A DNA stretch of 64,000 bases, from IMG/VR virus record IMGVR_UViG_3300030616_000016, positions 124,001 through 188,000 of that record; one strand, given 5' to 3'. The position numbers and the translations under genes are program-made. Below are positions 4,000 through 34,700 of this stretch, piece after piece. The first letter of the stretch is position 1, and every line of letters starts with the position of its first letter. The notes beneath the pieces were generated by a model. It was not told the origin of the DNA. It saw only the letters and a program-made list of their open reading frames with translations, and made no database searches.

Positions 4000-4204
4000 A
4001 TTCTTCTATCTTATTTTCTACAGGCCCGATTTTATTACCTAATATGATTCCAGCTGCAAAACATTTTGCACATATAATACCTACATCCAAGTTACCTTGT
4101 GATCCATGTAGCTTGGAATAATTACTTTGATTTATTTCATGATGTGTTATTGTTAATCTTGATTTGCCTTCAGTTCTAACTAAATAAACATATGTTTTAT
4201 TCAT
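3974..4204 (-). CDS. Hypothetical protein
   Basis: Co-oriented ORF with AAGGA SD. Confidence 0.55.
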   Translation of the reverse strand: MNKTYVYLVRTEGKSRLTITHHEINQSNYSKLHGSQGNLDVGIICAKCFAAGIILGNKIGPVENKIEEFDINGIVY

Positions 4205-4229
4205 TGCTTATTCCTTTCATATTTTGGCA

Positions 4230-4607
4230 TTACAAAAGCATTGCGATTTCTTGAATAATAAATAGTTTGGGAGCAACGCATATTTTAACTAAGCATATTG
4301 TATTACAAATTATAAATGGTATAGAAACCAATCCGCAAGTAATTCCTGCTACCCAATAAAACACTTCTTTATTATCGCAAGAATCAAACTCCTTGGTAAT
4401 CAAGCAGTAAAAACAATAAATAGCTGTTGTCAATAATATAATGCCTGCTGTAACTCCAATTATAGACAACCAGAAATTATACCTTAGGAGCTGATTGACT
4501 ATATCTGGAGCCTGAGAAATAGCAAAATCCTTGGTTTTGACTATTGATTCCAGAATTTCCTTGACTAACGACATTGATTCTTTCTCCATATTAAATTTCC
4601 TTTCCAA
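4230..4607 (-). CDS. Two-TM membrane protein
   Basis: Two long hydrophobic segments. Confidence 0.65.
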   Translation of the reverse strand: MERKFNMEKESMSLVKEILESIVKTKDFAISQAPDIVNQLLRYNFWLSIIGVTAGIILLTTAIYCFYCLITKEFDSCDNKEVFYWVAGITCGLVSIPFIICNTICLVKICVAPKLFIIQEIAMLL

Positions 4608-4633
4608 TAAGGGTTAAATTGGCCTAATTCTTT

Positions 4634-4963
4634 TCACGATTGTTCACTTCCGCAGTTTGTGCATGTAGTACCACTAAGATTTGTATAGCCACAATATTTA
4701 CAACTGGCTGTTTCTACAACACTACTGTATGTCCAATAGTATCCTCCTGCAGATATGCATACCAATAAGTATTCGTCTATCTTTGATGCACTTGTTTTTA
4801 TAGTATCAATTATAAATGGAATGTTAAGCGGCGGCTGCATGGTCTCAGATAAGGAGTAATGGTCGTGCTGTGTTCCAAAACTTGGATATTCATTAGGTGT
4901 ATGCCTTCTAATAACACACTTGGTTTTATTCTCCTTGGCTATTTGAAGCTCTTGAATTGTCAT
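4634..4963 (-). CDS. Accessory protein with C-terminal zinc ribbon (HYS..QPP subfamily)
   Basis: HYSLSETMQPPLNIPF and YSSVVETASCKYCG...CTNCGSEQ; close to 12302-12622. Confidence 0.75.
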   Translation of the reverse strand: MTIQELQIAKENKTKCVIRRHTPNEYPSFGTQHDHYSLSETMQPPLNIPFIIDTIKTSASKIDEYLLVCISAGGYYWTYSSVVETASCKYCGYTNLSGTTCTNCGSEQS

Positions 4964-5036
4964 TTGATATTATCCTAACCATGGTAATATTCTTCAAGTT
5001 CTTCTACGAACTCATGCAATTCTTTAAAGACTGTTT

Positions 5037-5300
5037 CTACGCATTTGAGACTATGCCATCCGGCTTCTTTCCACTTTTGCAATTTCCTCTGTTGTAATAT
5101 CCACTGTTGTTTTTCTCATCTACAGCCACTTTAATATCCTCCTTTGACAGATTTTTAACAAGTTTTATTTTATTTGTACACGCCTTATCCGAACATACTA
5201 TACGGTCATTGTCAAATCCACATCCGTACACTGGCAACATGATTTCACCACAAATATCACACTTGATCTGCACCTCAATAGCCCTTATAAATTGGTTCAT
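5037..5300 (-). CDS. Cys-rich hypothetical protein (3' region possibly frameshifted)
   Basis: CDIC...CSDKAC; starts at an ATGA junction. Confidence 0.5.
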   Translation of the reverse strand: MNQFIRAIEVQIKCDICGEIMLPVYGCGFDNDRIVCSDKACTNKIKLVKNLSKEDIKVAVDEKNNSGYYNRGNCKSGKKPDGIVSNA

Positions 5301-5665
5301 TGTTCACCGTCCTTCAATAATTCCGGGTTCTCGTGGATGTTGCCGATAATTTTGCCACTTGTGGCACCATAAAAAATTTGCCCGTCTTCGGTTTCAATAT
5401 AAAAAGTTCCTCCCATCCATTTAACTACACCAATGAGGACGATTTCGAGATCGTATTTTATAATATCACCTTGATAAACATCTTTGTCATCCCTGTCTTT
5501 AATATCGGTGAAGAACTCAGCAATACAGCCCTTTGCCAGCCTCTGAAAATAAGTGTGTCTAAGGTCAGCAACACAAAGCTCGCCGTTTGGGTTGAGGTAA
5601 TATTCATCTTCGTCATGGTCATACTTGCCTTCGTTTTCATTCCATACCCTGAATTTACCAGTCAT
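5297..5665 (-). CDS. yopX: YopX-family protein
   Basis: KFRVWN...TDIKDRDDKDVYQGDII...IIGNIHENPELL. Confidence 0.85.
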   Translation of the reverse strand: MTGKFRVWNENEGKYDHDEDEYYLNPNGELCVADLRHTYFQRLAKGCIAEFFTDIKDRDDKDVYQGDIIKYDLEIVLIGVVKWMGGTFYIETEDGQIFYGATSGKIIGNIHENPELLKDGEQ

Positions 5666-5713
5666 TGTTCTCCGTCCTCCTGTTCTGGTTCTGGTTCCGG
5701 TCCACCGTCTGGA

Positions 5714-6175
5714 CTATTGCTCTGATCCCACCACCTCAAACCACCGACACCGATATTTATTTCCAGCTTGATGAATTTCAGATAATTTAGTTCGTACTTT
5801 AATAATCTCTACCTTATTGACACTGTATTCTTTCGCATGTCGCAAAGTGGGCCATAAATATAAGCCGGGATGACATTCTGTGGTGCATACTGAGAAAAAA
5901 TCAGCCGAGTAAAACCGACCATCTCTATATTTATCAATATGCCCAGCTTCCCGAGTTCGATAACCAATAGCATAACCTTCGTCAATTTCGGGCCAGTCCG
6001 TTGGCGTGTTTAATGTCGCGTTCGGATCTAAAACGGTGTTCGACAAATTGGCTCCGGACAGATTAGCTCCGGACAGGTTGGCTCTGTACAGATTAGCTCC
6101 GGACAAATAGGCTCCGGACAAAGATGTCCCTTCGATCTCTTTTAACAATATTCCATCTTTATTTTTGATTTTCAT
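5714..6175 (-). CDS. Pentapeptide-repeat protein
   Basis: GTSLS GAYLS GANLY RANLS GANLS GANLS, then a Cys/His domain. Confidence 0.75.
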   Translation of the reverse strand: MKIKNKDGILLKEIEGTSLSGAYLSGANLYRANLSGANLSGANLSNTVLDPNATLNTPTDWPEIDEGYAIGYRTREAGHIDKYRDGRFYSADFFSVCTTECHPGLYLWPTLRHAKEYSVNKVEIIKVRTKLSEIHQAGNKYRCRWFEVVGSEQ

Positions 6176-6395
6176 TTTTTATCTCCATCAGCCACTGCCT
6201 TTCCCGATAATAATCGTCCCATCTTTCCTTCCAATACGCATCGTTCTCTTTCCTGCAATCCGGGCAGAGTGTAACCCAATTTTTCTCTTCATCAGTAAAA
6301 AGCGTGTTCTGTCTATATCTTTCAGCGTCATTTGCACCGCACGCTTGACATTTATTCTCTTTTTTAATATCCTTTAACTGAGATTCTGTTTTCAT
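6159..6395 (-). CDS. Small zinc-binding protein
   Basis: CQAC...CPDC. Confidence 0.6.
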   Translation of the reverse strand: MKTESQLKDIKKENKCQACGANDAERYRQNTLFTDEEKNWVTLCPDCRKENDAYWKERWDDYYRERQWLMEIKNENQK

Positions 6396-6895
6396 TGTTC
6401 ACCGTCCTTCCAGACGATGCCGACGATTTTGGCACGCTTAATTTTTTTGTAATCTAAATGGTATAACGAATTGTACCAGCCGCCGCTGTTTGCCCCAAAC
6501 CAGCCATGAGTAGTGCTTATTATATAATTATCAGGACGGCCCGGTTCCACCTGTAGCAGGCCGAGGCATTGGTTGAGATCCATGAGTTTGGATTCTGTTT
6601 TTAAAAGACCGTATATTTTATATAGTCTTTTAGTTCCAAATCTTTCTTTGTGACGTTTTTTCTCCGGCTCAATTAATCTGTACCCCTCTGGCAACTGGTA
6701 AATAGGCTTCTCTGGCTCTAGCTCTTTGAGTTCCAAGCCGATTTCTTCTGGGTCGGTGTATCCCATTGGGCTGTTATAACCACAACAACATACTATATAG
6801 TTTGACATTGTACTTAGTGTAAGTTTATGGCCAAGCGAGGTTGCTGCTTTGTTTATCACATTCTCATACGGACATTTATAATCTTCAATCTTCAT
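6392..6895 (-). CDS. Hypothetical protein
   Basis: ATGA-coupled at both ends; ends KDGEQ*. Confidence 0.6.
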   Translation of the reverse strand: MKIEDYKCPYENVINKAATSLGHKLTLSTMSNYIVCCCGYNSPMGYTDPEEIGLELKELEPEKPIYQLPEGYRLIEPEKKRHKERFGTKRLYKIYGLLKTESKLMDLNQCLGLLQVEPGRPDNYIISTTHGWFGANSGGWYNSLYHLDYKKIKRAKIVGIVWKDGEQ

Positions 6896-7194
6896 TCACC
6901 ATCCTCCTGTGGTTTGATAGTTATTTTGCCATCTAAACAAAAGTGTTTGCAGTTTTTTCTTCTACCTTTTATTGATTTACATAGTATATTTTTATATGCG
7001 TAGCAAACTGCAAAATAAGAAATATTCCACGCTGAAATACCCCATGCTGAAATGTCCCATGCTGAAATATTCTCTGCTGAAATATTTCTTGCTGAAATAT
7101 CCCCTGCTGAAATACTAAAACTAATATCAATGTCACAGCATATGCACACATCATCATCAATAACAGCAGTATTAGTTTTATCAACGTATTTCAA
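6892..7194 (-). CDS. Pentapeptide-like (ISAxx) repeat protein; start either TTG 7194 or ATG 7223 via -1 shift
   Basis: ISAGD ISARN ISAEN ISAWD ISAWG ISAWN (15-bp repeat); ends PQEDGE*. Confidence 0.65.
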   Translation of the reverse strand: MKYVDKTNTAVIDDDVCICCDIDISFSISAGDISARNISAENISAWDISAWGISAWNISYFAVCYAYKNILCKSIKGRRKNCKHFCLDGKITIKPQEDGE

Positions 7195-7241
7195 TAACTC
7201 TTCCTGTTTTTTATTATAATCATTCTCCGTCCTCCTCTGGT

Positions 7242-7568
7242 TCAGTCAATAACGTTTCGTATTTCATTTTCAAATGGATCGACCTCACGTACAATTCCGA
7301 TTTTATATTTGCCGGGCGATAGTGTTACTGGTCCATGCTCCTGATGCATAACGATTGCCTCTTTATCAACATAGCAATAGTGTTCGCCAGTGGCATCTTC
7401 CATTAGCATAACTCCGTCTGCAACACACGAATGATGGTGCCCTGTGACTTTTCCTTCAGCAAAAGTAACAAGTCCTTTTCGTGTGTTTTTTACCGGCTTT
7501 AAATTCGCAGGTATGCTATCAACTTCCTTAAACAGTACATCTCCCTGCTGTATTAAACGTTTCTCCAT
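7242..7568 (-). CDS. QGDV...EGxxTGHxH phage protein, usual partner of DUF6745-like genes
   Basis: IQQGDVLF, FAEGKVTGHHH, HQEHGPVTLSPGKY. Confidence 0.7.
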   Translation of the reverse strand: MEKRLIQQGDVLFKEVDSIPANLKPVKNTRKGLVTFAEGKVTGHHHSCVADGVMLMEDATGEHYCYVDKEAIVMHQEHGPVTLSPGKYKIGIVREVDPFENEIRNVID

Positions 7569-7579
7569 TATTTAAACTC

Positions 7580-8800
7580 CTATGTCAATTGTTCTGGAAT
7601 AAGCTCGCTTTGATTTCTCCAATTTAGAGCTTGTTCCACTGTTTTGATATTTTGTGGTACGCATTCCATGTGCCATGTACCAATGCTTGGATTTAGCATT
7701 TTAAGATAAGGCCATTTGCCGGTCTCACCCTTCAGATCTACTACAACCAATTCATAATCTCCTTGCGTGTCCAGTGATTCAGCGCCCGTAGATTTGACAA
7801 TTCGTTCTATACCTACCTTTCTTATAAACTCCCTACGGACTTCTGCATTATCAAGTTCTGCGAATTTAGCAGGGTCAATGTCATGCTCATTCGTTTCTGC
7901 TAACCACTGCGGAACTCGTACATTATTCAAATGCCACAGTCCCCAACCGTCCGCAAATTTTACAGACATTCCTCCATCTTTATGCAGATGACTGGCTTTC
8001 CAGTTTATTTCGATTGGATTCCGACTTACAATAGCAACATTTTTATACAGTGCGCTTGAGGATATTTTTCTGTTGTAATTTAGAAATATATCATATTTTT
8101 CTTTCTCATATTTAACGCCTATATATTTCCCAAACTCGTAAACTCCGCACCAATCATTCCACCATATGTTTATATACTGCTCGGTTTTTAATTTGTTGGC
8201 ACTAAGCCTGTCACGAAGGCTGTCACGAAGGCTGTCACGAAGGCTGGCATCAAGACTGTTACGAAGACCGGCACTAAGACTATCATAAAAACTATTATGA
8301 AGACTGTCATAAAGACTGTTACGAATATTGTCATGAAGGCTGTTACGAAGACTTTTATGAAGACTGGCATAAAGACTGTCATAAAGACTGGCATAAAGTT
8401 TGTCATAAAGATTGTCATGGAGACTGTTACGAAGACTTTTACGAAGACTTTTACGAAGACTGGCATCAAGACTGTAATAAAGACTGTCATAAAGACTGGT
8501 ATAAAGTTTGTCATAAAGATTGTCATGGAGACTGTTACGAAGACTTTTATGAAGATTGTCATGAAGATTGTTATGAAGATTGTCACTAAGCAAATGTTCT
8601 GTTAGTGCTGTTGTTAATGGGCTATCACAGATTATAATTTTAATGGCATTATCTGCACCAGTCATTTTTACAATAGGCAATACTGCGTGTTTAATTTCTT
8701 CATCACTGTATTGCGCCGATATGAGGTTTAAACAGCGATTTATATGTCTTGGTATCATTTTTTCTTGTTCTTTTGTTAAACTCATAATTTCCTCTTTCAT
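7580..8800 (-). CDS. DUF6745-like protein with central tetrapeptide (LxxS/N) repeat
   Basis: LHKDGGMSVKFADGWGLWHLNNVRVP, EVRREF, YLKMLNPS, over 30 LxxS-type units. Confidence 0.7.
   Translation of the reverse strand: MKEEIMSLTKEQEKMIPRHINRCLNLISAQYSDEEIKHAVLPIVKMTGADNAIKIIICDSPLTTALTEHLLSDNLHNNLHDNLHKSLRNSLHDNLYDKLYTSLYDSLYYSLDASLRKSLRKSLRNSLHDNLYDKLYASLYDSLYASLHKSLRNSLHDNIRNSLYDSLHNSFYDSLSAGLRNSLDASLRDSLRDSLRDRLSANKLKTEQYINIWWNDWCGVYEFGKYIGVKYEKEKYDIFLNYNRKISSSALYKNVAIVSRNPIEINWKASHLHKDGGMSVKFADGWGLWHLNNVRVPQWLAETNEHDIDPAKFAELDNAEVRREFIRKVGIERIVKSTGAESLDTQGDYELVVVDLKGETGKWPYLKMLNPSIGTWHMECVPQNIKTVEQALNWRNQSELIPEQLT
8200..8590. repeat. Intragenic 12-bp tandem repeat with a higher-order 72-nt block duplicated at period 108
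   Basis: Units such as GAAGACTGTCAT/AAAGACTGTTAC; block at 8371 repeated at 8479. Confidence 0.95.
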
Positions 8801-9072
8801 TCTGCGTCCTCCTGTTCTGGTTCTGGTCTTGTTACTTTAAATCCCATGTTTTCAACTTCATCCAAAGTATAAGCATCCTTCCGTGGTTCTTTATATTTTC
8901 TGCTTAATTCTATCCATTTATTACAACTTGGACAACGGCTATACATGTTCCTGATTTCTGTAGGGTCAACCTTATTCAGCATGCACTCTCCATCTTTGCT
9001 TTGAAATGAATCAACAGTGGTTCCACAAAAAGGGCAATACATTTCAAAGTTTACATAGTCATACATTCCCAT
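8797..9072 (-). CDS. Small zinc-binding protein
   Basis: CPFCG...CPSC; ends RPEPEQEDAE*. Confidence 0.6.
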   Translation of the reverse strand: MGMYDYVNFEMYCPFCGTTVDSFQSKDGECMLNKVDPTEIRNMYSRCPSCNKWIELSRKYKEPRKDAYTLDEVENMGFKVTRPEPEQEDAE

Positions 9073-9197
9073 TCTACGTCCTCCTCAATTATTTTTTGAA
9101 GACTTTTGAAATCTGACTTTAAGTCAAAAATTGCTTTTATCATCCATCCTATCGATGTTAGTATAAATGTGATAAAGCAATAGAAAACTATATCCAT
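9051..9197 (-). CDS. 48-aa single-TM protein (below ORF-track cutoff)
   Basis: MDIVFYCFITFILTSIGWMIKAIFDLKSDFKSLQKIIEEDVEWECMTM*; AGGAG SD. Confidence 0.5.
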   Translation of the reverse strand: MDIVFYCFITFILTSIGWMIKAIFDLKSDFKSLQKIIEEDVEWECMTM

Positions 9198-9320
9198 TTG
9201 GTATTCTCCTGTATGTGTATCCGGCCATTTATTAGGCCAAAATGGCCTGATTGATAATTAAGTTTGTTCGATAGGCGCCGCTTAACCGCTTATCAAGGTG
9301 CATTCGTAAGACCCCTGGCT

Positions 9321-9584
9321 TTAGGCGTGGGGTAATGTCACTTCTAAATCTAGTTCATATTTAATTGTTTTTACTAGATCATTAATTAATTCTGGACGTG
9401 TAGCCATAGTTTCTACATTCCAATTTCTGTTGATGTATTGTGGTTTACATCTTAAATTAAAATTTCCTCCAATATCAGAGATAGATTCAATTATAGCTTT
9501 GATTCTTTCAGGAGTTAAACCAGCATTATGATAGTCTTCAAAACTCAAATGGATTATTGTTGTTGTATAATAATTAAGTTTCAT
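9321..9584 (-). CDS. Hypothetical protein
   Basis: Co-oriented ORF coupled to the upstream gene. Confidence 0.55.
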   Translation of the reverse strand: MKLNYYTTTIIHLSFEDYHNAGLTPERIKAIIESISDIGGNFNLRCKPQYINRNWNVETMATRPELINDLVKTIKYELDLEVTLPHA

Positions 9585-9834
9585 TGTTCAATTCCTTTAG
9601 TTTAGCTTTCCATTGTTTTTCTGAATACCATTTGCCATCGAGACACCAAGCCTTATCTCCACTAGCCCACTCAATTGAAGGTCCATCTTCTCTGTGATAT
9701 TTGTCATTAATACACCAATACTTACTTCCATTGAAACCCTCAATTGCTGGAGCACCTTTTCGATGTAAGATTTTGTTTTTATCATAATGATCAAGAATGC
9801 TACCATCTTTATAATAGAATTTACTTCTTCTCAC
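9574..9834 (-). CDS. LHRxDGPA-repeat protein
   Basis: LHRKGAPAIE...YHREDGPSIE...WCLDGK. Confidence 0.7.
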   Translation of the reverse strand: MRRSKFYYKDGSILDHYDKNKILHRKGAPAIEGFNGSKYWCINDKYHREDGPSIEWASGDKAWCLDGKWYSEKQWKAKLKELNNET

Positions 9835-9878
9835 GTTTAGCCCTTTCTCTTATTAAATAATTAATCTATTTTCAATAT

Positions 9879-10352
9879 TTAAGTGGTTTGTAACTCGGCA
9901 ATAAGTAATGTGTTTCGTAAGATACTGCGCACGCTCTCAAAACTAAGATACAAATCGCTGTAGCAATCATTACATGACTCATATGGATAGTTATTGTATA
10001 TATTATCACTCCCACAAAATGGACATGTTAATTTATATAAACTATCAGATACACATTTGTTAATATTGAATGTGAATAATTTTAATGTTAGTGCGTTGCC
10101 TTCATCGAGCGGGACTTTGAACAATAAACTATAGGTACATATATTGTCACTCCCCTTTTTTCCTATACTTTCTAGATAAAGCGGCAATTTTCTTTGTTGG
10201 CCTATGTTAAGTTCTTGAGATACAACAGTCTCCTCCTCATCTGTCATATGGAACCTATAGTTAGTCGTTTGAGTCTCGTTAAGTGTATATGGGTTAGCAA
10301 TATAAATAAGCGGCCATTTCTCTTTCATAGCCTTAAGTAAGTTCAATTCCAT
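9879..10352 (-). CDS. Accessory protein with near-terminal zinc ribbon
   Basis: CPFCGSDNIYNNYPYESCNDC; AGGAG SD. Confidence 0.7.
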   Translation of the reverse strand: MELNLLKAMKEKWPLIYIANPYTLNETQTTNYRFHMTDEEETVVSQELNIGQQRKLPLYLESIGKKGSDNICTYSLLFKVPLDEGNALTLKLFTFNINKCVSDSLYKLTCPFCGSDNIYNNYPYESCNDCYSDLYLSFESVRSILRNTLLIAELQTT

Positions 10353-10401
10353 ATTTGATTGCTCCTTCTTGCCATCAATGTTGTTTTATACATTGATTAT
10401 A

Positions 10402-10472
10402 TTAGTCACGAACCATGTTAATTTCTTTTTTGAATGGATCTACTTCTCTTACAATGTCTATCTTTTCTCCAT
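10402..10472 (-). pseudogene. Collapsed second copy of the QGDV gene (N-terminus joined out of frame to C-terminus)
   Basis: ATG GAG AAA AGA (MEKR, as in 7568) directly followed in another frame by IDIVREVDPFKKEINMVRD*, versus IGIVREVDPFENEIRNVID* of 7242-7568. Confidence 0.75.
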
Positions 10473-10482
10473 TGTTTGACTC

Positions 10483-11598
10483 CTATGTCAATTGTTCTGG
10501 AATAAGCTCGCTCCGATTTCTCCAATTTAGAGCTTGCCGCACTGTTTTGATATTTTGTGGCACGCATTCCATGTGCCATGTGCCAATGCTTGGATTTAGC
10601 ATTTTTAGGTACGGCCATTCGCCAGTTGTGCCTTTTAGATCAACAAGAAGTAGCTCATAATCGCCTTGTTTATCTAATGATTTAGCGCCCATAGATTTGA
10701 CAATTCTTTCAATACCTACCTTATAAATAAATTCTCTGCGAATCTCTGCATTCTTAAGCTTACTGAATTTAGCTGGATCAATATCATGTTCATTTTGCTC
10801 TGCTAACCACCGTGGTACATTTACGTTGTTAAGATGCCAAAGCCCCCAGTTATCTGCGAATCTTACGGACATCCCGCCATCTTTATGCAACTTATTGCCC
10901 TTTGAGTTTATTTCAATTGGATTACGACTTACTAATATGGTATCCCCCCATACATTACAAGAAAATATTTTTCTATTGTAATTCACGACTCGATCATATT
11001 CTTTCTGATCGTATTCTAATCCGAGGTGTTTAAATAGCTCATAACATCCAATCCCTTCAATGTTACTATAACTTATAGATGGTATTAGAGGTTCATCGCC
11101 ACGGACAATCTCTTGATAAAGATGAAATAGATCACCAGTAAAACAGGTATCCTCTTCATAATAAAGCTCAGCAAGAATCTGGAATTTGATGTTACTATGA
11201 ATATCTCTGTTAATACCATCGCTAAGTTTTGAAGACAGCATGTATTTAAGTTTGTTCATCAATGGTTCTTTCTCTTCAGCAGCCTTTTGTACTTCATACA
11301 TATTCTCAGTTATATGGCGGTATTTAATAACTAAAGCTTTTTCTCTTGGCAGCTTTGCTTCTTTGTTGCTGTTATTTTGAATATCAGGCATTTTATTCAC
11401 AATCGCCATTGGACTATCACATATAATGAGTTCAACGTCTTCAATGCTCGTATTTATTACTTCAAGCGCAACAGCCACGGCTTGTTTAATTTCATCATCA
11501 GGATATTGTTTCGTGAGCAAGCTTATGGATTTATTTGCCTGTTGTGATGCAAGTTCTAGCATTTGTTCTTCTGTAAGCTCAGACATTGAGAATTTCAT
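10483..11598 (-). CDS. DUF6745-like paralog with non-repetitive centre
   Basis: Shares IICDSP and the whole C-terminal domain with 7580-8800; last ~120 nt nearly identical. Confidence 0.75.
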   Translation of the reverse strand: MKFSMSELTEEQMLELASQQANKSISLLTKQYPDDEIKQAVAVALEVINTSIEDVELIICDSPMAIVNKMPDIQNNSNKEAKLPREKALVIKYRHITENMYEVQKAAEEKEPLMNKLKYMLSSKLSDGINRDIHSNIKFQILAELYYEEDTCFTGDLFHLYQEIVRGDEPLIPSISYSNIEGIGCYELFKHLGLEYDQKEYDRVVNYNRKIFSCNVWGDTILVSRNPIEINSKGNKLHKDGGMSVRFADNWGLWHLNNVNVPRWLAEQNEHDIDPAKFSKLKNAEIRREFIYKVGIERIVKSMGAKSLDKQGDYELLLVDLKGTTGEWPYLKMLNPSIGTWHMECVPQNIKTVRQALNWRNRSELIPEQLT

Positions 11599-11730
11599 GT
11601 ATTGTTTCCTTTATAAGCGTATTTGTTTTCCTATGTAGGCGGTTGGCCCCAAAGCCACAAACCGCCGCACTTATTCTTTCATATTCCCAGAGAGTGAATT
11701 ACCTTGTAGGAATAACCTTTGTGAGCCATA

Positions 11731-11905
11731 GAAACCTAGATTAGCCTGTAGGAAGCTGGATTGGCTTGTAAAAAGTATGTAATTACTAGATGAGCTTGTG
11801 GAAAGCTAGATTAATCTATAGAAAGTCAGATTAACTTATAAAAAGTCAGATTAACTTATAAAAAGTCAGATTAACTTATAAAAAGTCAGATTAACTTATA
11901 AAAAG
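11731..11905. repeat. 20-bp tandem repeat, perfect on the right and degenerate on the left
   Basis: AAAAGTCAGATTAACTTATA x3 plus one G-variant (11821-11900), preceded by degenerate units from 11731. Confidence 0.9.
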
Positions 11906-12305
11906 TATGGTCACTGGCTCTCTCGTGTTCAGGAATTGCTGTTTCACAACCACAATTATTACAAGTATTTGTCACATCATTGTATCCACAGAACTTACAC
12001 TTGGCATATGTCATATCTTTAAGCCCAGGACATATATATCTATCCTTTATCCACTCGGCAATAGCCAAGATAGTAGTTCCATCGTGTAGTGAGCTTACAG
12101 CAGTTAATGGCTCGTGTAGAACCTTTTGATGTAGCAGGCCCTGGATCTTGTCATCTATGATGATTTTATTTGATCTGTCCTGCGGTTTTTTGTATGTTAA
12201 GATTGCGGGGCCGTATACAAACCATTCAAATGATATTTCGTGCTCCCAGTCTATCATTATTCTTCTTCCACTCTTTATGCATTCATTAATCTCATCAAGA
12301 GTCAT
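11886..12305 (-). CDS. Accessory protein with C-terminal zinc ribbon
   Basis: CKFCGYNDVTNTCNNCGC; paralog of 2885-3316. Confidence 0.75.
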   Translation of the reverse strand: MTLDEINECIKSGRRIMIDWEHEISFEWFVYGPAILTYKKPQDRSNKIIIDDKIQGLLHQKVLHEPLTAVSSLHDGTTILAIAEWIKDRYICPGLKDMTYAKCKFCGYNDVTNTCNNCGCETAIPEHERASDHTFYKLI

Positions 12306-12622
12306 TGCTCACTCCCGCAGTTATTACATGTGTTATTGTTTAAGTCGGTGTAGCCGCAGTATTTACATTCAAATAACTCCACAACACTACTGTATGCATA
12401 ATATATGTTCCAAACGTTTGGTGTGTAGCATTGTATGACCAGCTCATCTAGTTTTGTCTTGCTGGGTGAAGTATGTATTATTGTGAATGGAGTATTGAGC
12501 GGCGGCTGGTCTGCTTTACCTATACTATAGTGTTGTCCAGGCATTGGCGTTAGAGGAGTATGCCTTCTAACAATGCATTTTGTTTTGTTAATCCTGGCAT
12601 TCTCAAGTTGTACATGAGTCAT
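12302..12622 (-). CDS. Accessory protein with C-terminal zinc ribbon (HYS..QPP subfamily)
   Basis: HYSIGKADQPPLNTPF; YSSVVELFECKYCG...CNNCGSEQ. Confidence 0.75.
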   Translation of the reverse strand: MTHVQLENARINKTKCIVRRHTPLTPMPGQHYSIGKADQPPLNTPFTIIHTSPSKTKLDELVIQCYTPNVWNIYYAYSSVVELFECKYCGYTDLNNNTCNNCGSEQ

Positions 12623-12627
12623 TGTTT

Positions 12628-12974
12628 CTATTCTCCTGTATATGAAGGAATCGCGGCGTTATACCATTCACAACCACAATAACTACATGCCCCATCATCA
12701 TTTATGTCACTTCCACAATACTGACAGATGGCCGGCACTACACACGAAACATATACATAATAGCCATCTCTCGTTCTAAGTACTTTTTCCCACATGTATT
12801 TGAGTTGTCTATAAGTTTTATTTGGAATCTTTTCCCTACTGGTGGTTGATGGTTTTCTCTCAAAGAGTAGTGTCCGCCTTCTTTGTGTTCAGTCTTTTTC
12901 TTGGTGTGTTGGGTGGTAATAAACCACGCATCTTTGTTCTTTCGCCAGATCTTACGTAACTGCTTCCATTTCAT
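12628..12974 (-). pseudogene. Zinc-ribbon paralog split by a -1 frameshift at G AAA AAG (programmed shift, phase variation or 1-nt deletion)
   Basis: Frame 0 gives HYSLRENHQPP and stops at 12738. The -1 frame from 12784-12789 gives EKVLRTRDGYYVYVSCVVPAICQYCGSDINDDGACSYCGCEWYNAAIPSYTGE*, ending 6 nt before the next ATG. Confidence 0.75.
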
Positions 12975-13299
12975 TGTTTATCTCCATATCTACTTTGCAT
13001 CCGCAATTGGTACATGTATCACTTCTAATATCCGCGCCACAATACGTACAATAAGCCAATTCTATTACAGACGAGTAAGCATTCTTCATGTCGTTGGTTA
13101 TTACTAGTATATCTGGATTGGATAATGAGGGGAATAGACTGGTTATTCGGAATGGCTCAAATGGTTCTGGTTGGTCGTCAGGATGGACTTCATAGGCTCC
13201 TGCGATTGGATGCTTTTCTCGTTCCTTTGTTTTTCTTGTGATTATGAATCGAGTGCTGTTGTTTTTGCTCCAAATATCACGTAAGTAGTTAAGATCCAT
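12952..13299 (-). CDS. Accessory protein with C-terminal zinc ribbon (start re-assigned to MDLNYL)
   Basis: YSSVIELAYCTYCGADIRSDTCTNCGC; GGAGA SD before ATG 13299. Confidence 0.75.
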   Translation of the reverse strand: MDLNYLRDIWSKNNSTRFIITRKTKEREKHPIAGAYEVHPDDQPEPFEPFRITSLFPSLSNPDILVITNDMKNAYSSVIELAYCTYCGADIRSDTCTNCGCKVDMEINNEMEAVT

Positions 13300-31775: not shown

Positions 31776-34700
31776 GTGCAGATTGAAAGACCCGACCCCT
31801 ATTCTTCGGATATGTGTAAAGAATGCAAAGCGATGTACAGAAAGCTGTATGATGAAGGTAAGATAAAGAACCCATTTCCTCCTTTGTGTCGTGGAGATAG
31901 AAGACTACAAGAAGGATATATATGTGATGGCATGTCTCCTCAAGAGAAAGCCTTAGCTGTTTTATCTAATCCTTCTACATGGGCTAAATATGAACTCAAC
32001 ATAGCACCCAGGTGGTATCAGGAGACCATGCTCGCATGCTCTGCCAGACAGACAGTACTGCGATGCGGTAGACGTATAGGAAAGAGTTTTATGTTGGTAT
32101 TAAGAGCTCTTCACAACATGTCTAGAAATAAACACTATCGCGTTCTTATTGTTGCTCCATACCAGAACCAAATCAATATTCTTTTTGGTTTTATAGACAA
32201 GTTTATTTCTGATTCTAAAACCATAAAGAACAAAGTTAAAAGAAGGGTTAAATCTCCTCAACTTCTTGAATTAACCAATGGCTCATTGATACAAGGCTTT
32301 CCATCAGGTATTAACTCTGGCGGTAAGAGTGATAAGGTTCGTGGTCAAGATGCCGATGAGATTCTTATTGACGAGATTGACTATCTGCCAGACGGAGATA
32401 TCGACGCTATTGTTGCTATTCTGGCTTCAAATAAAAACACCAAGATATCAGTTTCATCTACTCCTAGTGGTAGAAAAACCAAGTATTATAAATTCTGCAC
32501 TCACAAGCAAGACGGATGGAAAGAATGGCACTTCTCTTCCATGGTTTCTCCAGAGTGGACAGAGCAGACCGAGAACATGCTACGAGGTATGTATTCAACT
32601 CTGGCATGGGAACACGAAATATGTTTGAGCGGCGATACTTTAGTAAGAACTACGCTTGCAGATAAAAAAATAAAAGACATTACCTGCGAAGATTTTGTAT
32701 ATGATAGTAACTTTAATATAGTCGAAGTTGCTAAGGGCGCCACTTATACTGGTAGGAAACAAGTTGTGAAATACACTTTACCCAATGACAGACATATAGT
32801 TTCTACACCAGACCATAGCTTTCCTAATAGGAGTTTTACCAAAACACCCATTGAAAGCCTTGATGAATTACCAGTGTATAGAGATAAAAGATATAATTCG
32901 TCTGACAGAGATGTGGTTTTAGCTAGACTTGTTGGGTACAACTTGGGCGATGGATCTTGTTGTTCGACTAGATATCAGTCAAGTTTCTACTCATCATCTT
33001 ATTCTGATATGGACAAAATAGTTAAAGACTTACATACTATTTATCCTGGCTATAAAGGGAACGTTTTGGAAGATGTTATTAATAACTCAAACAAAAAAGC
33101 CTCACTAGTTCATGTCGACGGCAAAAGATGCTCTGTTAATGTTAGTAAAAAAATTACATTGGATTTAATAAGTCATGGCGTCGTAAGAGGTAAAAAGGTA
33201 GAACAAGAATTTAATATACCAGATTTTATTGCAAGTTCCAATGATTTAGAGGTTAAGAGAGAATTTATTGCTGCTTTGTTTGGAGCGGAAGGATCTATGC
33301 CAGCTAAGGCATGCGACGACGGATATATGCCGCACACTTTATCTTTATCTATGTCTAAGCGGCGTGGGGTGTCTGCAGATGTGTTTTTTGATGGGTTGGT
33401 GAGTATATTAAAAGAATTTGGCGTAAGATCTACATGGACTTCGCATCCAGCACAATTCAAATCTGCTAATAATGGTATATGTCATAACACTGTCTATGCG
33501 CTTTATGTTCATAATAGCTTTGATAATATTTATGCTTTTTTGAATAAGGTAGGCTATAGATATTGCGATGCAAAAGAACAAGCTGCGTTTAATATTAAAT
33601 GCTATCTTGAGTGCTATGATTATGCCTTAAAAGCCAAGAGGAATCGATTTGAGTATGCTCGAATATTAAAAGATAAGAAGTTGAGTCATAAAGAAATAAG
33701 CAAGAGAACGCGCTTAAGTCTTGCGCAAATCAGCAAAGCTATTGCGGGTCGCATTCCAAAGAGATTTTATAATGAATTTCCCAAATTGGATGACTGGCTG
33801 AAGTATAATGTCGTTGGCTCCGGTGTATTCATGCCAATAGTAAAACGCAGAAAATTACCTAAGCCTATTGATGTATACAATATAACAGTTGGATCACACG
33901 ACCATTCATACATATTGGGGAACGATACAAGGACTTTTAATTGCGCAGAATTTGGCCAGTTTGAAGAAGGTGCCTTTCCAACCAAAAAGCTTGTTGAAAG
34001 CATGCAGTCTTATACATATGCTCAATGTTCCAGGAAGCCAAATTGCATTTATTCAATGGGCGTTGACTGGAATGAGCATCCAATTGGCGTTCATATGGTT
34101 GTTGTTGAATATGATCCTGAATATGGCCAGTTTAAAGTTGTAGACAAAAAGATATCTAACGACAAGGAATTTACTCAAACTAAAGCAGTAGAAGACATCA
34201 TTACAACATATAGAACGTGGATGCCAGATTGGCTATGGGCTGATGCCGGCGCCGGTGGATATCAAATTGAAACTTTGAAGAGAGTTGCAAACGCTAAACC
34301 TGATCTTAGATTAAGAAAGAAGATACGTGGTGTGGTTATGCATGAGAAAGAGATAATCAAAGATCCTATAACAAAGCGTGATGTAAAGAAACAGGCGAAG
34401 GCATTGATGGTTGATTTATGTGTGCGACGAGTAGAGATTGGTCAGTGTATATTTCCAAGAATTGAAGATGATGAAAACATGTTAGTAGACCAAATCAGAA
34501 ACTTCAAGGTAGAGAGGTTTACTCCTAATGGTATTCCTGTCTACTCTCAGGGCAAAGACCATACTGCAGTTGCATGGATGGTCGCTATGTATGCCATACT
34601 TCTTAATCGCACGGATATTAAGAATGTCAAACATTGCAAGAATGTTGGTTCTGTTCCAATATACAATTCCATTACAGGAGCATCGACCACAACAAGATCC

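What the first reader, a model, noticed from the sequence alone, without database searches (positions are those of the whole stretch)
5297..9086. Cassette block: unrelated genes joined by one conserved SD-plus-overlap junction
Seen (coding strand): GAAGGACGGTGAACAATGA identical at 5297-5315 and 6392-6410; CAGGAGGACGGAGAACAATGA 5662; CAGGAGGATGGTGAATGA 6892; GAGGAGGACGGAGAATGA 7220; CAGGAGGACGCAGAATGA 8797; GAGGAGGACGTAGAATG 9070. Upstream genes therefore end in (K/E)D(G/A/V)E(Q)* tails and the next ATG overlaps the stop. A 23-nt stretch is identical between 5673-5695 and 8805-8827. The motif is not seen at junctions elsewhere in the window. Inference: junctions act as micro-homology crossover points that let accessory genes be swapped while keeping translational coupling, i.e. 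an integrase-free gene-cassette array.
Basis: partly seen in the sequence, partly recalled or inferred. Interest (0 to 1): 0.7.

Follow-up and report, generated by a model that had tools for sequence, protein, structure and literature searches.

The report
Shared linker between phage gene cassettes
A short ribosome-binding "linker" is repeated seven times between unrelated small genes of an uncultured giant phage from marine sediment. The same linker borders the only DNA this phage shares with two unrelated phages from the same project, so it probably acts as both a translation coupler and a seam where genes are swapped.

Summary
Seven minus-strand copies of AGGA(C/T)GNNGA(ACA)ATG lie in window 5297-9086 (4 and 3 matches to the two forms; 0.09 and 0.00 expected) and nowhere else in the 231,647-bp jumbo myovirus genome.

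The genes between the copies are unrelated: zinc ribbons, a DUF6745 plus 108-aa pair, pentapeptide-repeat proteins, an orphan and YopX.

One upstream gene reads through its stop, and two end 18 and 48 nt earlier in another frame. The same 28-nt DNA is therefore a coding tail at one junction and a non-coding spacer at another. This makes it a DNA/RNA element, not a peptide tag.

Two unrelated phage contigs from the same sediment project (43 kb, 50% GC; 29 kb, 43% GC) carry two copies each. They share only small segments that end in or beside the linker, with different neighbours.

Elsewhere the 19-mer occurs only once per contig: 39 metagenome contigs and 12 in 596 Gb of genomes.

No integrase, hairpin, promoter or terminator is associated with it. 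The phage encodes a RecA-family recombinase.

Best reading: a portable translational-coupling linker that also serves as short homology for cassette exchange, analogous to T4 PeSLs. That crossing-over occurs inside the linker is inferred, not shown.

The parts
9070..9086 (-). Linker copy 1 (g1>g2). It has GAGGAGGACGTAGA + ATG, but the stop position reads TGG, so g1 reads on 22 nt to 9051.
8797..8827 (-). Linker copy 2 (g2>g3), medium form: (CCAGAA)2-CAG-GAGGACGCAGA-ATGA. It is translated in frame as the g2 tail PEPEQEDAE*. It matches copy 6 at 27 of 28 nt.
   Evidence: D7
7220..7241 (-). Linker copy 3 (g4>g5). An 18-nt untranslated spacer, ACCAGAGGAGGACGGAGA, follows the native g4 stop, then ATGA.
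   Evidence: (all 20 aligned g4 homologues end ..V.D*, as g4 does)
7191..7223 (-). A 10-codon ORF (MIIIKNRKSY*) opened by the ATG of linker copy 3. Its TGA overlaps the TTG start of g5 (TTGA). It contains the heptamer A_AAA_AAC, where a -1 shift would enter the g5 frame.
   Evidence: A Logan contig of run X2 matches 7346 down to 7223 and then diverges (record 11).
6892..6912 (-). Linker copy 4 (g5>g6): ACCACAGGAGGATGGTGA-ATGA, translated in frame as the tail KPQEDGE*.
6392..6410 (-). Linker copy 5 (g6>g7): GAAGGACGGTGAACAATGA, tail KDGEQ*. Together with base 6391 it is a 20-nt stretch identical to copy 7.
   Evidence: (D6)
5662..5713 (-). Linker copy 6 (g8>g9), long form. A 48-nt untranslated spacer with (CCRGAA)3 and GGAGGACGGAGAACA, then ATGA. 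Window 5662-5733 is 93% identical to G001 31781-31849.
   Evidence: (the g8 C-terminus is native to its family)
5297..5315 (-). Linker copy 7 (g9>g10): GAAGGACGGTGAACAATGA. The tail KDGEQ* is appended after the YopX domain ends at residue 118 of 122.
9051..9197 (-). g1, a 48-aa predicted membrane peptide and first gene of the block.
8797..9072 (-). g2, a 91-aa zinc-ribbon protein (CPFC...CPSC).
7580..8800 (-). g3, a 406-aa DUF6745 protein with a 12-nt tandem-repeat array at 8161-8616.
   Evidence: D1
7242..7568 (-). g4, 108 aa (phrog_27831). It forms a conserved two-gene module with DUF6745 in other phages. There is no linker between g3 and g4.
6892..7194 (-). g5, a 100-aa protein with pentapeptide-like repeats (ISAxx) and a TTG start.
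   Evidence: (D2)
6392..6895 (-). g6, a 167-aa orphan. It has no homologue among 5.8 billion proteins other than itself.
6159..6395 (-). g7, a 78-aa zinc ribbon (phrog_35853). It is 96% nt-identical over 193 nt to a gene of the unrelated 43-kb phage G001. Sister strains carry the G001 alleles at 6271, 6309 and 6315.
6172..6205 (-). The g7>g8 junction, possibly a degenerate linker. GGGAAAGGCAGTG aligns to GGGAAGGACGGTG of G001, followed by a 13-nt insert that carries an ordinary GGAGAT SD.
   Evidence: alignment; weak
5714..6175 (-). g8, a 153-aa pentapeptide-repeat protein with a conserved C-terminal domain. Its C-terminus ..RCRWFEVVGSEQ* is native to the family.
5297..5665 (-). g9, a 122-aa YopX-family protein.
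5037..5300 (-). g10, an 87-aa cysteine-rich protein and last gene preceded by the linker.

Best explanation
The seven motifs are copies of one portable linker of 17-52 nt. It consists of an optional run of CCAGAA units, then GGAGGACGNNGAA, then (CA)ATGA. The linker separates unrelated accessory-gene modules in a same-strand, polycistronic array of small genes in an uncultured 232-kb jumbo myovirus from marine sediment.

At the RNA level it is a strong, unstructured Shine-Dalgarno site placed 5-8 nt before an ATG that overlaps or closely follows the upstream stop. Each incoming module is therefore translated by coupling or re-initiation without its own promoter or native RBS. This step is inferred from the anatomy.

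At the DNA level the copies are short direct repeats, 20-28 nt identical within the genome. They are shared with at least two unrelated co-occurring phages. Recombination in or next to the linker, by RecA-type or relaxed homologous recombination and helped by occasional illegitimate joins, moves modules in, out and between phages. This step is inferred from where shared segments end.

Where the upstream reading frame happens to run into the linker, it adds an acidic tail (..EDGE(Q)*). Otherwise the linker stays untranslated.
For: Shown:
- The motif is non-random and confined to 3.8 kb of 231 kb.
- The flanked genes are unrelated families.
- The same DNA is a coding tail at g2>g3 and a non-coding spacer at g8>g9 and g4>g5. 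The g4 and g8 families end at their own native C-termini.
- YopX homology stops at residue 118, so KDGEQ is appended.
- Synonymous positions (GAG, GAC, GAA, CAA) are fixed while the one variable codon changes the residue (G/A/V).
- The junction RNAs are no more structured than shuffles; z is positive in 6 of 7.
- There is no Rfam hit and no promoter or terminator excess.
- The 19-mer GRAGGACGGWGAACAATGA occurs more than once per contig only in G000 (3 copies), G001 (2) and G002 (2). These come from IMG metagenomes with adjacent contig prefixes (Ga0272441 and Ga0272442). There are 39 single-copy metagenome contigs, and 12 single-copy contigs in 596 Gb of genomes against about 17 expected by chance.
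- G000, G001 and G002 share nothing else by tblastx at 1e-6 and differ in GC (38, 50 and 43%).
- G000 and G001 agree up to the ATGA of the g8 linker and then carry different genes, YopX versus a 78-aa zinc ribbon.
- G001 and G002 share that zinc-ribbon gene plus 16 nt of linker, with different upstream genes.
- In G001 the low-GC genes (36-42% against 50-57% in the flanks) lie between two perfect 17-nt linker copies. A 431-nt two-gene insert is flanked by a 42-nt direct repeat that includes the junction.
- An X2 contig diverges from G000 at the linker ATG at 7223.
- The DUF6745 + g4 pair is a module in other phages. It lacks the linker internally, and g4 homologues elsewhere lack it downstream.
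- Sister strains of G000 carry a 45-136-nt patch of G001 alleles inside g7, which points to homologous exchange between the two lineages.
- G000 encodes a RecA-family protein.
Against: - Only three contigs carry the linker in multiple copies, and all come from one sediment project. The sample of boundaries is small (7).
- Surviving mosaic breakpoints are expected at gene boundaries anyway.
- One G001 boundary is an illegitimate join 70 nt upstream, inside g8.
- No deletion, circle or alternative order between linker copies was seen in Logan contigs of two runs, but contigs drop rare variants.
- The only alternative arrangement of the G000 block seen is one short X2 contig that diverges after g4 (record 11). 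Every longer assembly has the same order.
- No recombinase was found in G001.
- Translational coupling is untested.
- The same 19-mer works as an ordinary single RBS in many unrelated organisms.
Confidence: 0.55

Rival explanations
1. Passenger junction. The linker copies descend from one ancestral junction through local segmental duplication and gene replacement. The sharing with G001 and G002 reflects ordinary transfer of small multi-gene fragments by illegitimate recombination. The linker then marks gene boundaries but is not itself the crossover site.
For: - The region shows duplication and decay: a DUF6745 paralogue 80% identical over 477 nt, followed by an internally deleted g4 remnant.
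- One G001 boundary is an illegitimate join inside g8.
- The 431-nt insert in G001 duplicates 25 nt of the next gene, not just the linker.
- No excision products were seen.
Against: - Modules of clearly different origin sit between linker copies that their homologues elsewhere lack. Examples are the DUF6745 + g4 pair, YopX and the g8 family with native ends.
- Shared segments stop at the ATGA or at the 5' edge of the linker in several independent comparisons.
- A patch of G001 alleles in g7 shows that homologous exchange does occur.
Confidence: 0.25
2. Favoured RBS context only. The similarity is convergent and imposed by an SD (GGAGG), an A-rich spacer, an ATGA overlap and the acidic codons these force on the upstream frame.
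For: - Other phages show look-alike junctions such as GGAGGAYGARGAATGA (EEDEE* tails), several per contig.
- The exact 19-mer occurs once per contig as a start context in 39 metagenome and 12 genome contigs.
Against: - None of about 295 other gene starts and about 27 other ATGA overlaps in the same genome uses it.
- The identities of 20-28 nt extend into CCAGAA repeats and spacer bases with no SD role.
- The occurrence in 596 Gb of genomes is at chance level, 12 against about 17 expected.
- Copies co-occur with shared flanking genes in three phages of one habitat.
Confidence: 0.1
3. Functional C-terminal peptide tag. The acidic tail ..(PE)n-Q-E-D-G-E-(Q) is selected as a degron, docking or targeting signal on several accessory proteins, and the DNA repeat is a by-product.
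For: Seven of the 11 copies in the three phages are read in the tail frame: five in G000 (one of them reading on past the stop position), one in G001 and one in G002.
Against: - The tail is untranslated after g4 and g8, in G001 g7, and upstream of the 64-aa G002 gene.
- g1 reads through it.
- Synonymous sites are invariant while the G/A/V position changes the residue.
- Tail length varies from 4 to more than 12 residues.
Confidence: 0.04
4. Cis-site for a trans-acting factor. This could be a translational repressor or SD-cleaving RNase (RegA/RegB-like), or a homing endonuclease target that promotes gene conversion.
For: - The linker holds two GGAG-like elements at an RBS.
- An HNH gene lies about 8 kb away.
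- g7 gives a weak HNH-like zinc-ribbon hit, E = 0.007.
Against: - The three phages share no other gene that could encode a common factor.
- g7 contains no histidine, so it is not an active HNH enzyme.
- There is no conserved structure.
- A host-encoded factor cannot be excluded.
Confidence: 0.05

Closest known systems
PeSL (promoter-early stem-loop) cassettes of T4-type phages (Arbiol et al. 2010, PMC2839356; Comeau et al. 2014, PMC4122927)
   Same: - Short conserved regulatory cassettes are repeated between small non-essential ORFs in a hyperplastic region of a large myovirus.
- Recombination between copies is proposed to cause insertions, deletions and replacements, and so to drive horizontal transfer without a site-specific recombinase.
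   Different: - PeSLs are a sigma-70-type promoter plus a terminator hairpin, so they are transcriptional units. This linker has neither. It is a translational unit: an SD plus a stop/start overlap, sometimes inside the upstream ORF.
- It is much shorter (17-52 nt).
- It is shared here between unrelated phages, not just between close relatives.
- Mini-circles have not been shown.
Short conserved boundary sequences as recombination points in mosaic phage genomes (the modular-evolution 'linker' idea for lambdoid phages, from my own knowledge) and relaxed homologous recombination by phage recombinases (De Paepe et al. 2014, PMC3945230)
   Same: - Short homology at gene boundaries is flanked by unrelated DNA in different phages.
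- A phage-encoded recombinase is available (RecA family in G000).
- There is a patchy allele exchange within a shared gene.
   Different: - Here one and the same sequence is reiterated at seven successive boundaries of one array.
- It has an evident translational role.
- The recombinases studied in that work are Rad52-like, and none was found here.
Integron gene-cassette arrays (IntI + attC)
   Same: Promoter-less, same-orientation, unrelated small genes are each separated by a copy of a repeated element. Cassette content varies between carriers.
   Different: - There is no tyrosine or serine recombinase in any of the three records.
- The linker has no imperfect inverted repeat or folded attC-like structure.
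- The linker overlaps coding sequence and carries the RBS.
Translationally coupled ATGA overlaps and the synthetic 'bicistronic design' leader (Mutalik et al. 2013, from my own knowledge)
   Same: - The SD is embedded in the 3' end of an upstream cistron, and its stop overlaps the next start.
- The g4>g5 junction, with a 10-codon leader ORF ending in TTGA, is literally a bicistronic leader.
- This design gives context-independent expression of whatever gene is placed downstream.
   Different: - Natural ATGA overlaps are normally idiosyncratic at each junction, as are about 27 others in this genome. Here one standard sequence is reused.
- Coupling has not been measured.

Membership tests
PeSL cassettes (T4-type phages) | Strong sigma-70-like early promoter within the cassette | tested here: not met
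   The linker contains no -35/-10 pair. Promoter-like sites in 4000-12000 number 34 against 30.9 expected, and none coincides with the copies.
PeSL cassettes (T4-type phages) | Stem-loop that acts as a terminator | tested here: not met
   There is no stable fold at any of the 7 junctions; z ranges from -1.0 to +1.7. Five terminator-like sites were found against 4.3 expected, none at a linker.
PeSL cassettes (T4-type phages) | Repeated between small non-essential ORFs of a hyperplastic region, with indels and replacements between phages bounded by the copies | tested here: inconclusive
   The location is met. Five to six of 7 boundaries between G000, G001, G002 and an X2 contig fall at the linker. 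No close relative with a different gene content was available.
PeSL cassettes (T4-type phages) | Mini-circles formed by recombination between neighbouring copies | not testable with these tools
   Only Logan contigs, not raw reads, were available for the two runs. No back-joining contig between linker copies was seen.
Integron cassette array | Adjacent IntI-type tyrosine recombinase | tested here: not met
   PF00589 and PF00239 are absent from G000, G001 and G002, while the controls were positive.
Integron cassette array | attC site: imperfect inverted repeats that fold as a hairpin | tested here: not met
   The linker copies fold no better than shuffled sequence, and the sequence is not palindromic on reading. 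No inverted-repeat search was run; one search looked for direct repeats only.
Integron cassette array | Promoter-less cassettes, one orientation, unrelated functions | tested here: met
   All ten genes lie on the minus strand, belong to unrelated families, and there is no promoter excess.
Translational-coupling junction | SD 5-10 nt upstream of the start, lying in or just after the upstream ORF | tested here: met
   GGAGGA or GAAGGA lies 6-9 nt before the ATG in all 7 copies.
Translational-coupling junction | Stop codon overlapping or within a few nt of the next start | tested here: inconclusive
   There is an ATGA overlap in 4 of 7. The others are a 22-nt overlap (g1) and 18- and 48-nt spacers (g4, g8).
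Translational-coupling junction | Downstream translation depends on upstream translation | not testable with these tools
   This needs reporter assays. No RNA or ribosome data exist for this uncultured phage (one search found DNA runs only).
Short-homology recombination seams of mosaic phages | The same short sequence at a gene boundary in different phages, with unrelated DNA on at least one side | tested here: met
   G000/G001 at the g8 linker, G001/G002 at the zinc-ribbon gene, and G000/G001 around g7.
Short-homology recombination seams of mosaic phages | A recombinase able to use short or diverged homology | tested here: inconclusive
   A RecA-family gene is present in G000. No RecT or ERF is present in any record, and none was found in G001. 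Host enzymes are unknown.

The most novel reading that the evidence does not exclude
The linker is a selected, promiscuous 'plug' standard. It would be a translational-coupling cassette boundary that lets promoter-less small genes hop between unrelated phages of one community (a 232-kb jumbo myovirus, a 43-kb phage and a third phage) by short-homology recombination, with no integrase. Any gene dropped behind it would be expressed at once. This would be a translational counterpart of T4 PeSL mini-circle shuffling and a natural version of the synthetic bicistronic design.
Probability: 0.3. Interest if true: 0.75.

Novelty: new variant of a known kind. Interest (0 to 1): 0.55.

Why it matters
How phages acquire and immediately express foreign small genes is a long-standing question in phage mosaicism. 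The alternatives are illegitimate recombination followed by selection, or recombination at conserved seams.

A reiterated RBS with a stop/start linker would be a concrete, testable seam of a new, translational type. Here the same linker borders the only DNA shared by three otherwise unrelated phages of one habitat.

It would also explain why accessory proteins in such arrays carry odd acidic tails: they are read-through of linker DNA, not functional domains. That matters for annotation.

The linker may also be useful as a natural, context-independent expression linker.

Tried and rejected
- **Close relatives with a different gene order.** None were found.
  - The phage collection by megablast gave nothing.
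  - IMG/VR by the g3 protein gave nothing.
  - IMG/VR by the major capsid protein gave only a 38% relative. GenBank phages gave at most 31%, Bacillus phage 0305phi8-36.
  - g6 has no homologue among 5.8 billion proteins.
  - Contigs carrying g6 are 99.6-100% identical strains with the same order.
- **The medium-form 17-mer in IMG/VR.** It gave five unrelated chance hits.
- **Other loci hit by the degenerate motif scans.** They share no DNA or protein with the block, apart from a conserved YopX C-terminus and two distant g7 homologues.
- **More distant g7 and g4 homologues.** They do not carry the linker, so it does not travel with those families in general.
- **Relatives of the G001/G002 zinc-ribbon gene in IMG/VR.** Only those two and one 31% hit were found. 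Exact-protein look-ups gave only re-assemblies of G001.
- **Extra scans for the G001 junction and the g8 3' end.** Only G001 itself was found.
- **RNA structure, Rfam family, tRNA, promoter or terminator.** Nothing was found.
- **Extended anti-SD pairing.** Beyond AGGAGG the linker does not match the canonical 16S 3' end. This is my own reading of the sequence.
- **Assembly chimera.** Rejected. Independent JGI, ENA and Logan assemblies bridge the junctions in the same order.
- **My first idea that g8 and g4 carry frameshifted tails.** Rejected. Both families end at the same native C-terminus.
- **My first whole-genome pattern.** It was mis-specified and found one copy. It was replaced.

Full report
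**Setting.** The window is bases 124,001-188,000 of a 231,647-bp virus record that CheckV rates 95% complete. It has a terminase, portal, major head protein and tail sheath. Its capsid protein is only 31% identical to that of Bacillus jumbo phage 0305phi8-36. The samples are marine-sediment metagenomes. Almost all genes below window position ~23,850 lie on the minus strand. The finding sits in a long run of small minus-strand genes. I call the ten genes from 9197 down to 5037 g1 to g10.

- The two IUPAC forms of the motif match 4 and 3 times in the window, against 0.09 and 0.00 expected from shuffles. All seven matches fall in 5297-9086.
- In the whole genome the 11-mer core with at most one mismatch occurs eight times. 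Six are block junctions. The other two are not followed by a start codon. The seventh block copy has two mismatches.
- I made a rough gene call of 305 genes. No other start, including about 27 other ATGA-type overlaps, carries the motif.
- The genome's ordinary context is AAGGAGAWA, and the most similar pair of upstream regions in the genome is the g7/g10 pair.
- The repeat finder gives a 20-nt perfect pair (5296-5315 and 6391-6410) and a 28-nt pair with one mismatch (5668-5695 and 8800-8827).
- Independent JGI, ENA and Logan assemblies bridge the junctions in the same order, so this is not an assembly chimera.

**What lies between the copies.** The genes are unrelated:
- a 48-aa membrane peptide;
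- three different cysteine-rich or zinc-ribbon proteins;
- a 406-aa DUF6745 protein;
- a 108-aa protein of phrog_27831;
- two pentapeptide-repeat proteins;
- a 167-aa orphan with no homologue among 5.8 billion proteins;
- a YopX protein.

There is no Rfam family, tRNA, or excess of promoter-like or terminator-like sites. The block therefore looks like one polycistronic unit.

**The tails are not a property of the proteins.** That is true at four junctions.
- At 9070 the stop position reads TGG, and g1 runs on for 22 nt.
- g4 stops 18 nt, and g8 stops 48 nt, before the linker ATG, in a different frame.
- Twenty aligned g4 homologues all end ..V.D*, exactly where g4 does.
- Eleven aligned g8 homologues share its C-terminus ..RCRWFxVxG...
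- So the DNA after these two stops is untranslated linker. The same 28 nt encodes the tail PEPEQEDAE* of g2.
- YopX homology ends at residue 118 of 122, so KDGEQ is an appendage.
- Across copies the synonymous positions are fixed (GAG, GAC, GAA, CAA). The one variable codon changes the residue (G, A or V).

Together these points argue for conservation or recency at the DNA/RNA level, not for a peptide tag. The junction RNAs fold no better than shuffled sequence, with positive z in six of seven. This fits an open ribosome-binding site.

**The g4>g5 junction.** The linker ATG at 7223 opens only a 10-codon ORF. Its TGA overlaps the TTG start of g5 (TTGA). The ORF contains A_AAA_AAC, where a -1 shift would also enter the g5 frame. 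Either way the linker acts as a leader for a gene that brought its own 5' end. A Logan contig of run X2 follows g4 and the linker down to 7223 and then diverges (record 11).

**The linker outside this genome.**
- A scan of IMG/VR with a degenerate 18-mer gave 60 loci. Only two had two copies. Both come from one IMG/VR sample (3300028920), whose metagenome contig prefix (Ga0272441) is adjacent to that of the window's own contig (Ga0272442).
- A scan of 241 million metagenome records with the 19-mer GRAGGACGGWGAACAATGA gave 42 contigs. Only the window's genome (3 copies), G001 (43,281 bp, 100% complete, 2 copies) and G002 (a 28,880-bp fragment, 2 copies) have more than one.
- In 596 Gb of prokaryotic genomes there are 12 contigs with one copy each. 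My estimate of the chance expectation is about 17.
- So the sequence is not a generally favoured RBS. The multi-copy state is specific to these phages.

**What the three phages share.**
- By tblastx at 1e-6 and by blastn, G000 and G001 share only g7 (193 nt, 96%) and 72 nt that comprise the last 20 nt of g8 plus the 48-nt linker and ATGA (93%).
- G001 and G002 share only a 78-aa zinc-ribbon gene plus 16 nt of linker.
- G000 and G002 share nothing beyond the linker itself.
- Their GC contents are 38, 50 and 43%.

**Where the shared segments end.**
- (a) G000 and G001 are identical through the g8 linker up to ATGA. G000 then continues with YopX and G001 with the zinc-ribbon gene.
- (b) G001 and G002 agree from the 5' edge of the linker into the zinc-ribbon gene, but have different upstream genes.
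- (c) Around g7, high identity starts 12 nt after G000's linker ATG. It ends at the 5' edge of G001's perfect linker copy.
  - At each end, the other genome has only a diverged, still alignable junction. This alignment is weak.
- (d) The X2 contig breaks at the ATG at 7223.
- (e) In G001, a 431-nt insert (a 63-aa gene plus g7) is flanked by a 42-nt direct repeat, 83% identical with 25 nt exact. The repeat spans the junction and the first codons of a 32-aa membrane-peptide gene. It leaves a 9-codon stump of that gene.
- (f) The right end of the G001 segment is an illegitimate join inside the g8 3' end, 70 nt from the ATG. This boundary is not at a linker.

In G001 the three low-GC genes (36-42%) sit between GC-rich flanks (50-57%) and between two perfect 17-nt linker copies.

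**Modules.** In other phages the DUF6745 gene is followed directly by a g4 homologue. In the window this pair has no linker between its genes and one on each side. The g4 homologues elsewhere have unrelated downstream DNA. The linker is therefore a feature of the array, not of the genes placed in it.

**Evidence for homologous exchange.** Sister strains of G000 (L010 and L011) have, over the 2.1-5.9 kb compared, only two SNP clusters plus three scattered single differences in L010.
- One cluster has three sites in g7 (6271, 6309, 6315). These are exactly the G001 alleles at three consecutive of the eight sites that distinguish G000 from G001.
- The other cluster has five sites in g4.
- This is a conversion patch of 45-136 nt between the jumbo phage and the 43-kb phage lineage.
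- G000 encodes a RecA-family protein. No RecT or ERF gene, and no tyrosine or serine recombinase, is present in any of the three records.

**Interpretation.**
- Shown:
  - one short sequence is reiterated at module boundaries of this array;
  - it acts at the nucleic-acid level;
  - it recurs in unrelated co-occurring phages;
  - shared segments mostly end at it.
- Inferred:
  - it couples translation of successive modules;
  - its copies are the homology at which modules are exchanged.
- The closest described system is the PeSL cassette of T4-type phages (PMC2839356, PMC4122927). That cassette is transcriptional (a promoter plus a terminator hairpin), and this element fails both features.
- It resembles an integron array in layout but lacks an integrase and an attC structure.
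- It fits the general picture of relaxed homologous recombination at short homologies in mosaic phages (PMC3945230).
- Functionally it resembles the synthetic bicistronic-design leader (my own knowledge).

**Limits.**
- There are three multi-copy contigs from one project and seven informative boundaries.
- Only contigs, not reads, were available, so rare excision products cannot be excluded or shown.
- The host is unknown and there are no RNA data.
- Surviving mosaic joints are expected at gene boundaries in any case. The passenger model, in which the linker marks but does not mediate the joints, therefore remains a serious rival.

I rate the finding a new variant of a known kind, of moderate interest.

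Noticed in passing
window 8161-8616 (inside g3): A 12-nt tandem array of about 38 units encodes a four-residue repeat (SLxD/N-like) in the DUF6745 protein. Logan contigs from two runs show copy-number variants that skip 108 and 252 nt.
   Followed up: partly
window 10353-11598: A second DUF6745 gene (371 aa) has a 3' 477 nt that is 80% identical to g3, with the last ~100 nt and the following SD nearly identical. It is followed by an internally deleted g4 remnant: MEKR*, then ..IVREVDPFKKEINMVRD*. This is a decayed duplicate of the g3-g4 module.
   Followed up: partly
window 7191-7223: A 10-codon leader ORF contains the canonical -1 slippery heptamer A_AAA_AAC. One extra A in the A6 run would fuse the linker ATG to g5. 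All independent assemblies call the same 100-aa TTG-start gene.
   Followed up: partly
window 6271, 6309, 6315 and 7296-7372: SNPs between 99.6-99.8% identical strains are clustered in g7 (3 sites, all matching the G001 allele) and g4 (5 sites). L011 has no other differences in 2.1 kb. L010 has three further single differences (5343, 5473, 7612) in 5.9 kb. This looks like short gene-conversion patches.
   Followed up: yes
G001 (L192) 11094-11135 and 11525-11566: A 42-nt direct repeat flanks a 431-nt two-gene insert in the 43-kb phage. It leaves a 9-codon stump (MTYYHAIFF*) of a 32-aa membrane-peptide gene that is intact after the second copy.
   Followed up: yes
window 9581-9600: The junction before the 87-aa gene at 9321-9584 reads AAAGGAATTGAACAATGAAAC.
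   Followed up: no
window 5244-5404: Contig depth spikes about five-fold in both runs. Several other contigs match only the conserved YopX C-terminus (..GNIHENPELL) and break at 5310-5318, inside the linker. One carries a variant junction, GAAGGACGGTGACTGATGA.
   Followed up: partly
L008 vs L009 (second 231,593-bp assembly of the same phage): The ENA assembly differs from the JGI record by a single ~40-nt indel, and gene calls differ around window ~12,300-13,000, outside the block.
   Followed up: no
window 5714-6175 (g8): The g8 family (pentapeptide repeats plus a conserved ~100-aa C-terminal domain containing TECHPG) is very large. There are 4,055 cluster representatives at E<=1e-10, and many are small proteins of 110-290 aa. 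The C-terminal domain matched no Pfam family.
   Followed up: no
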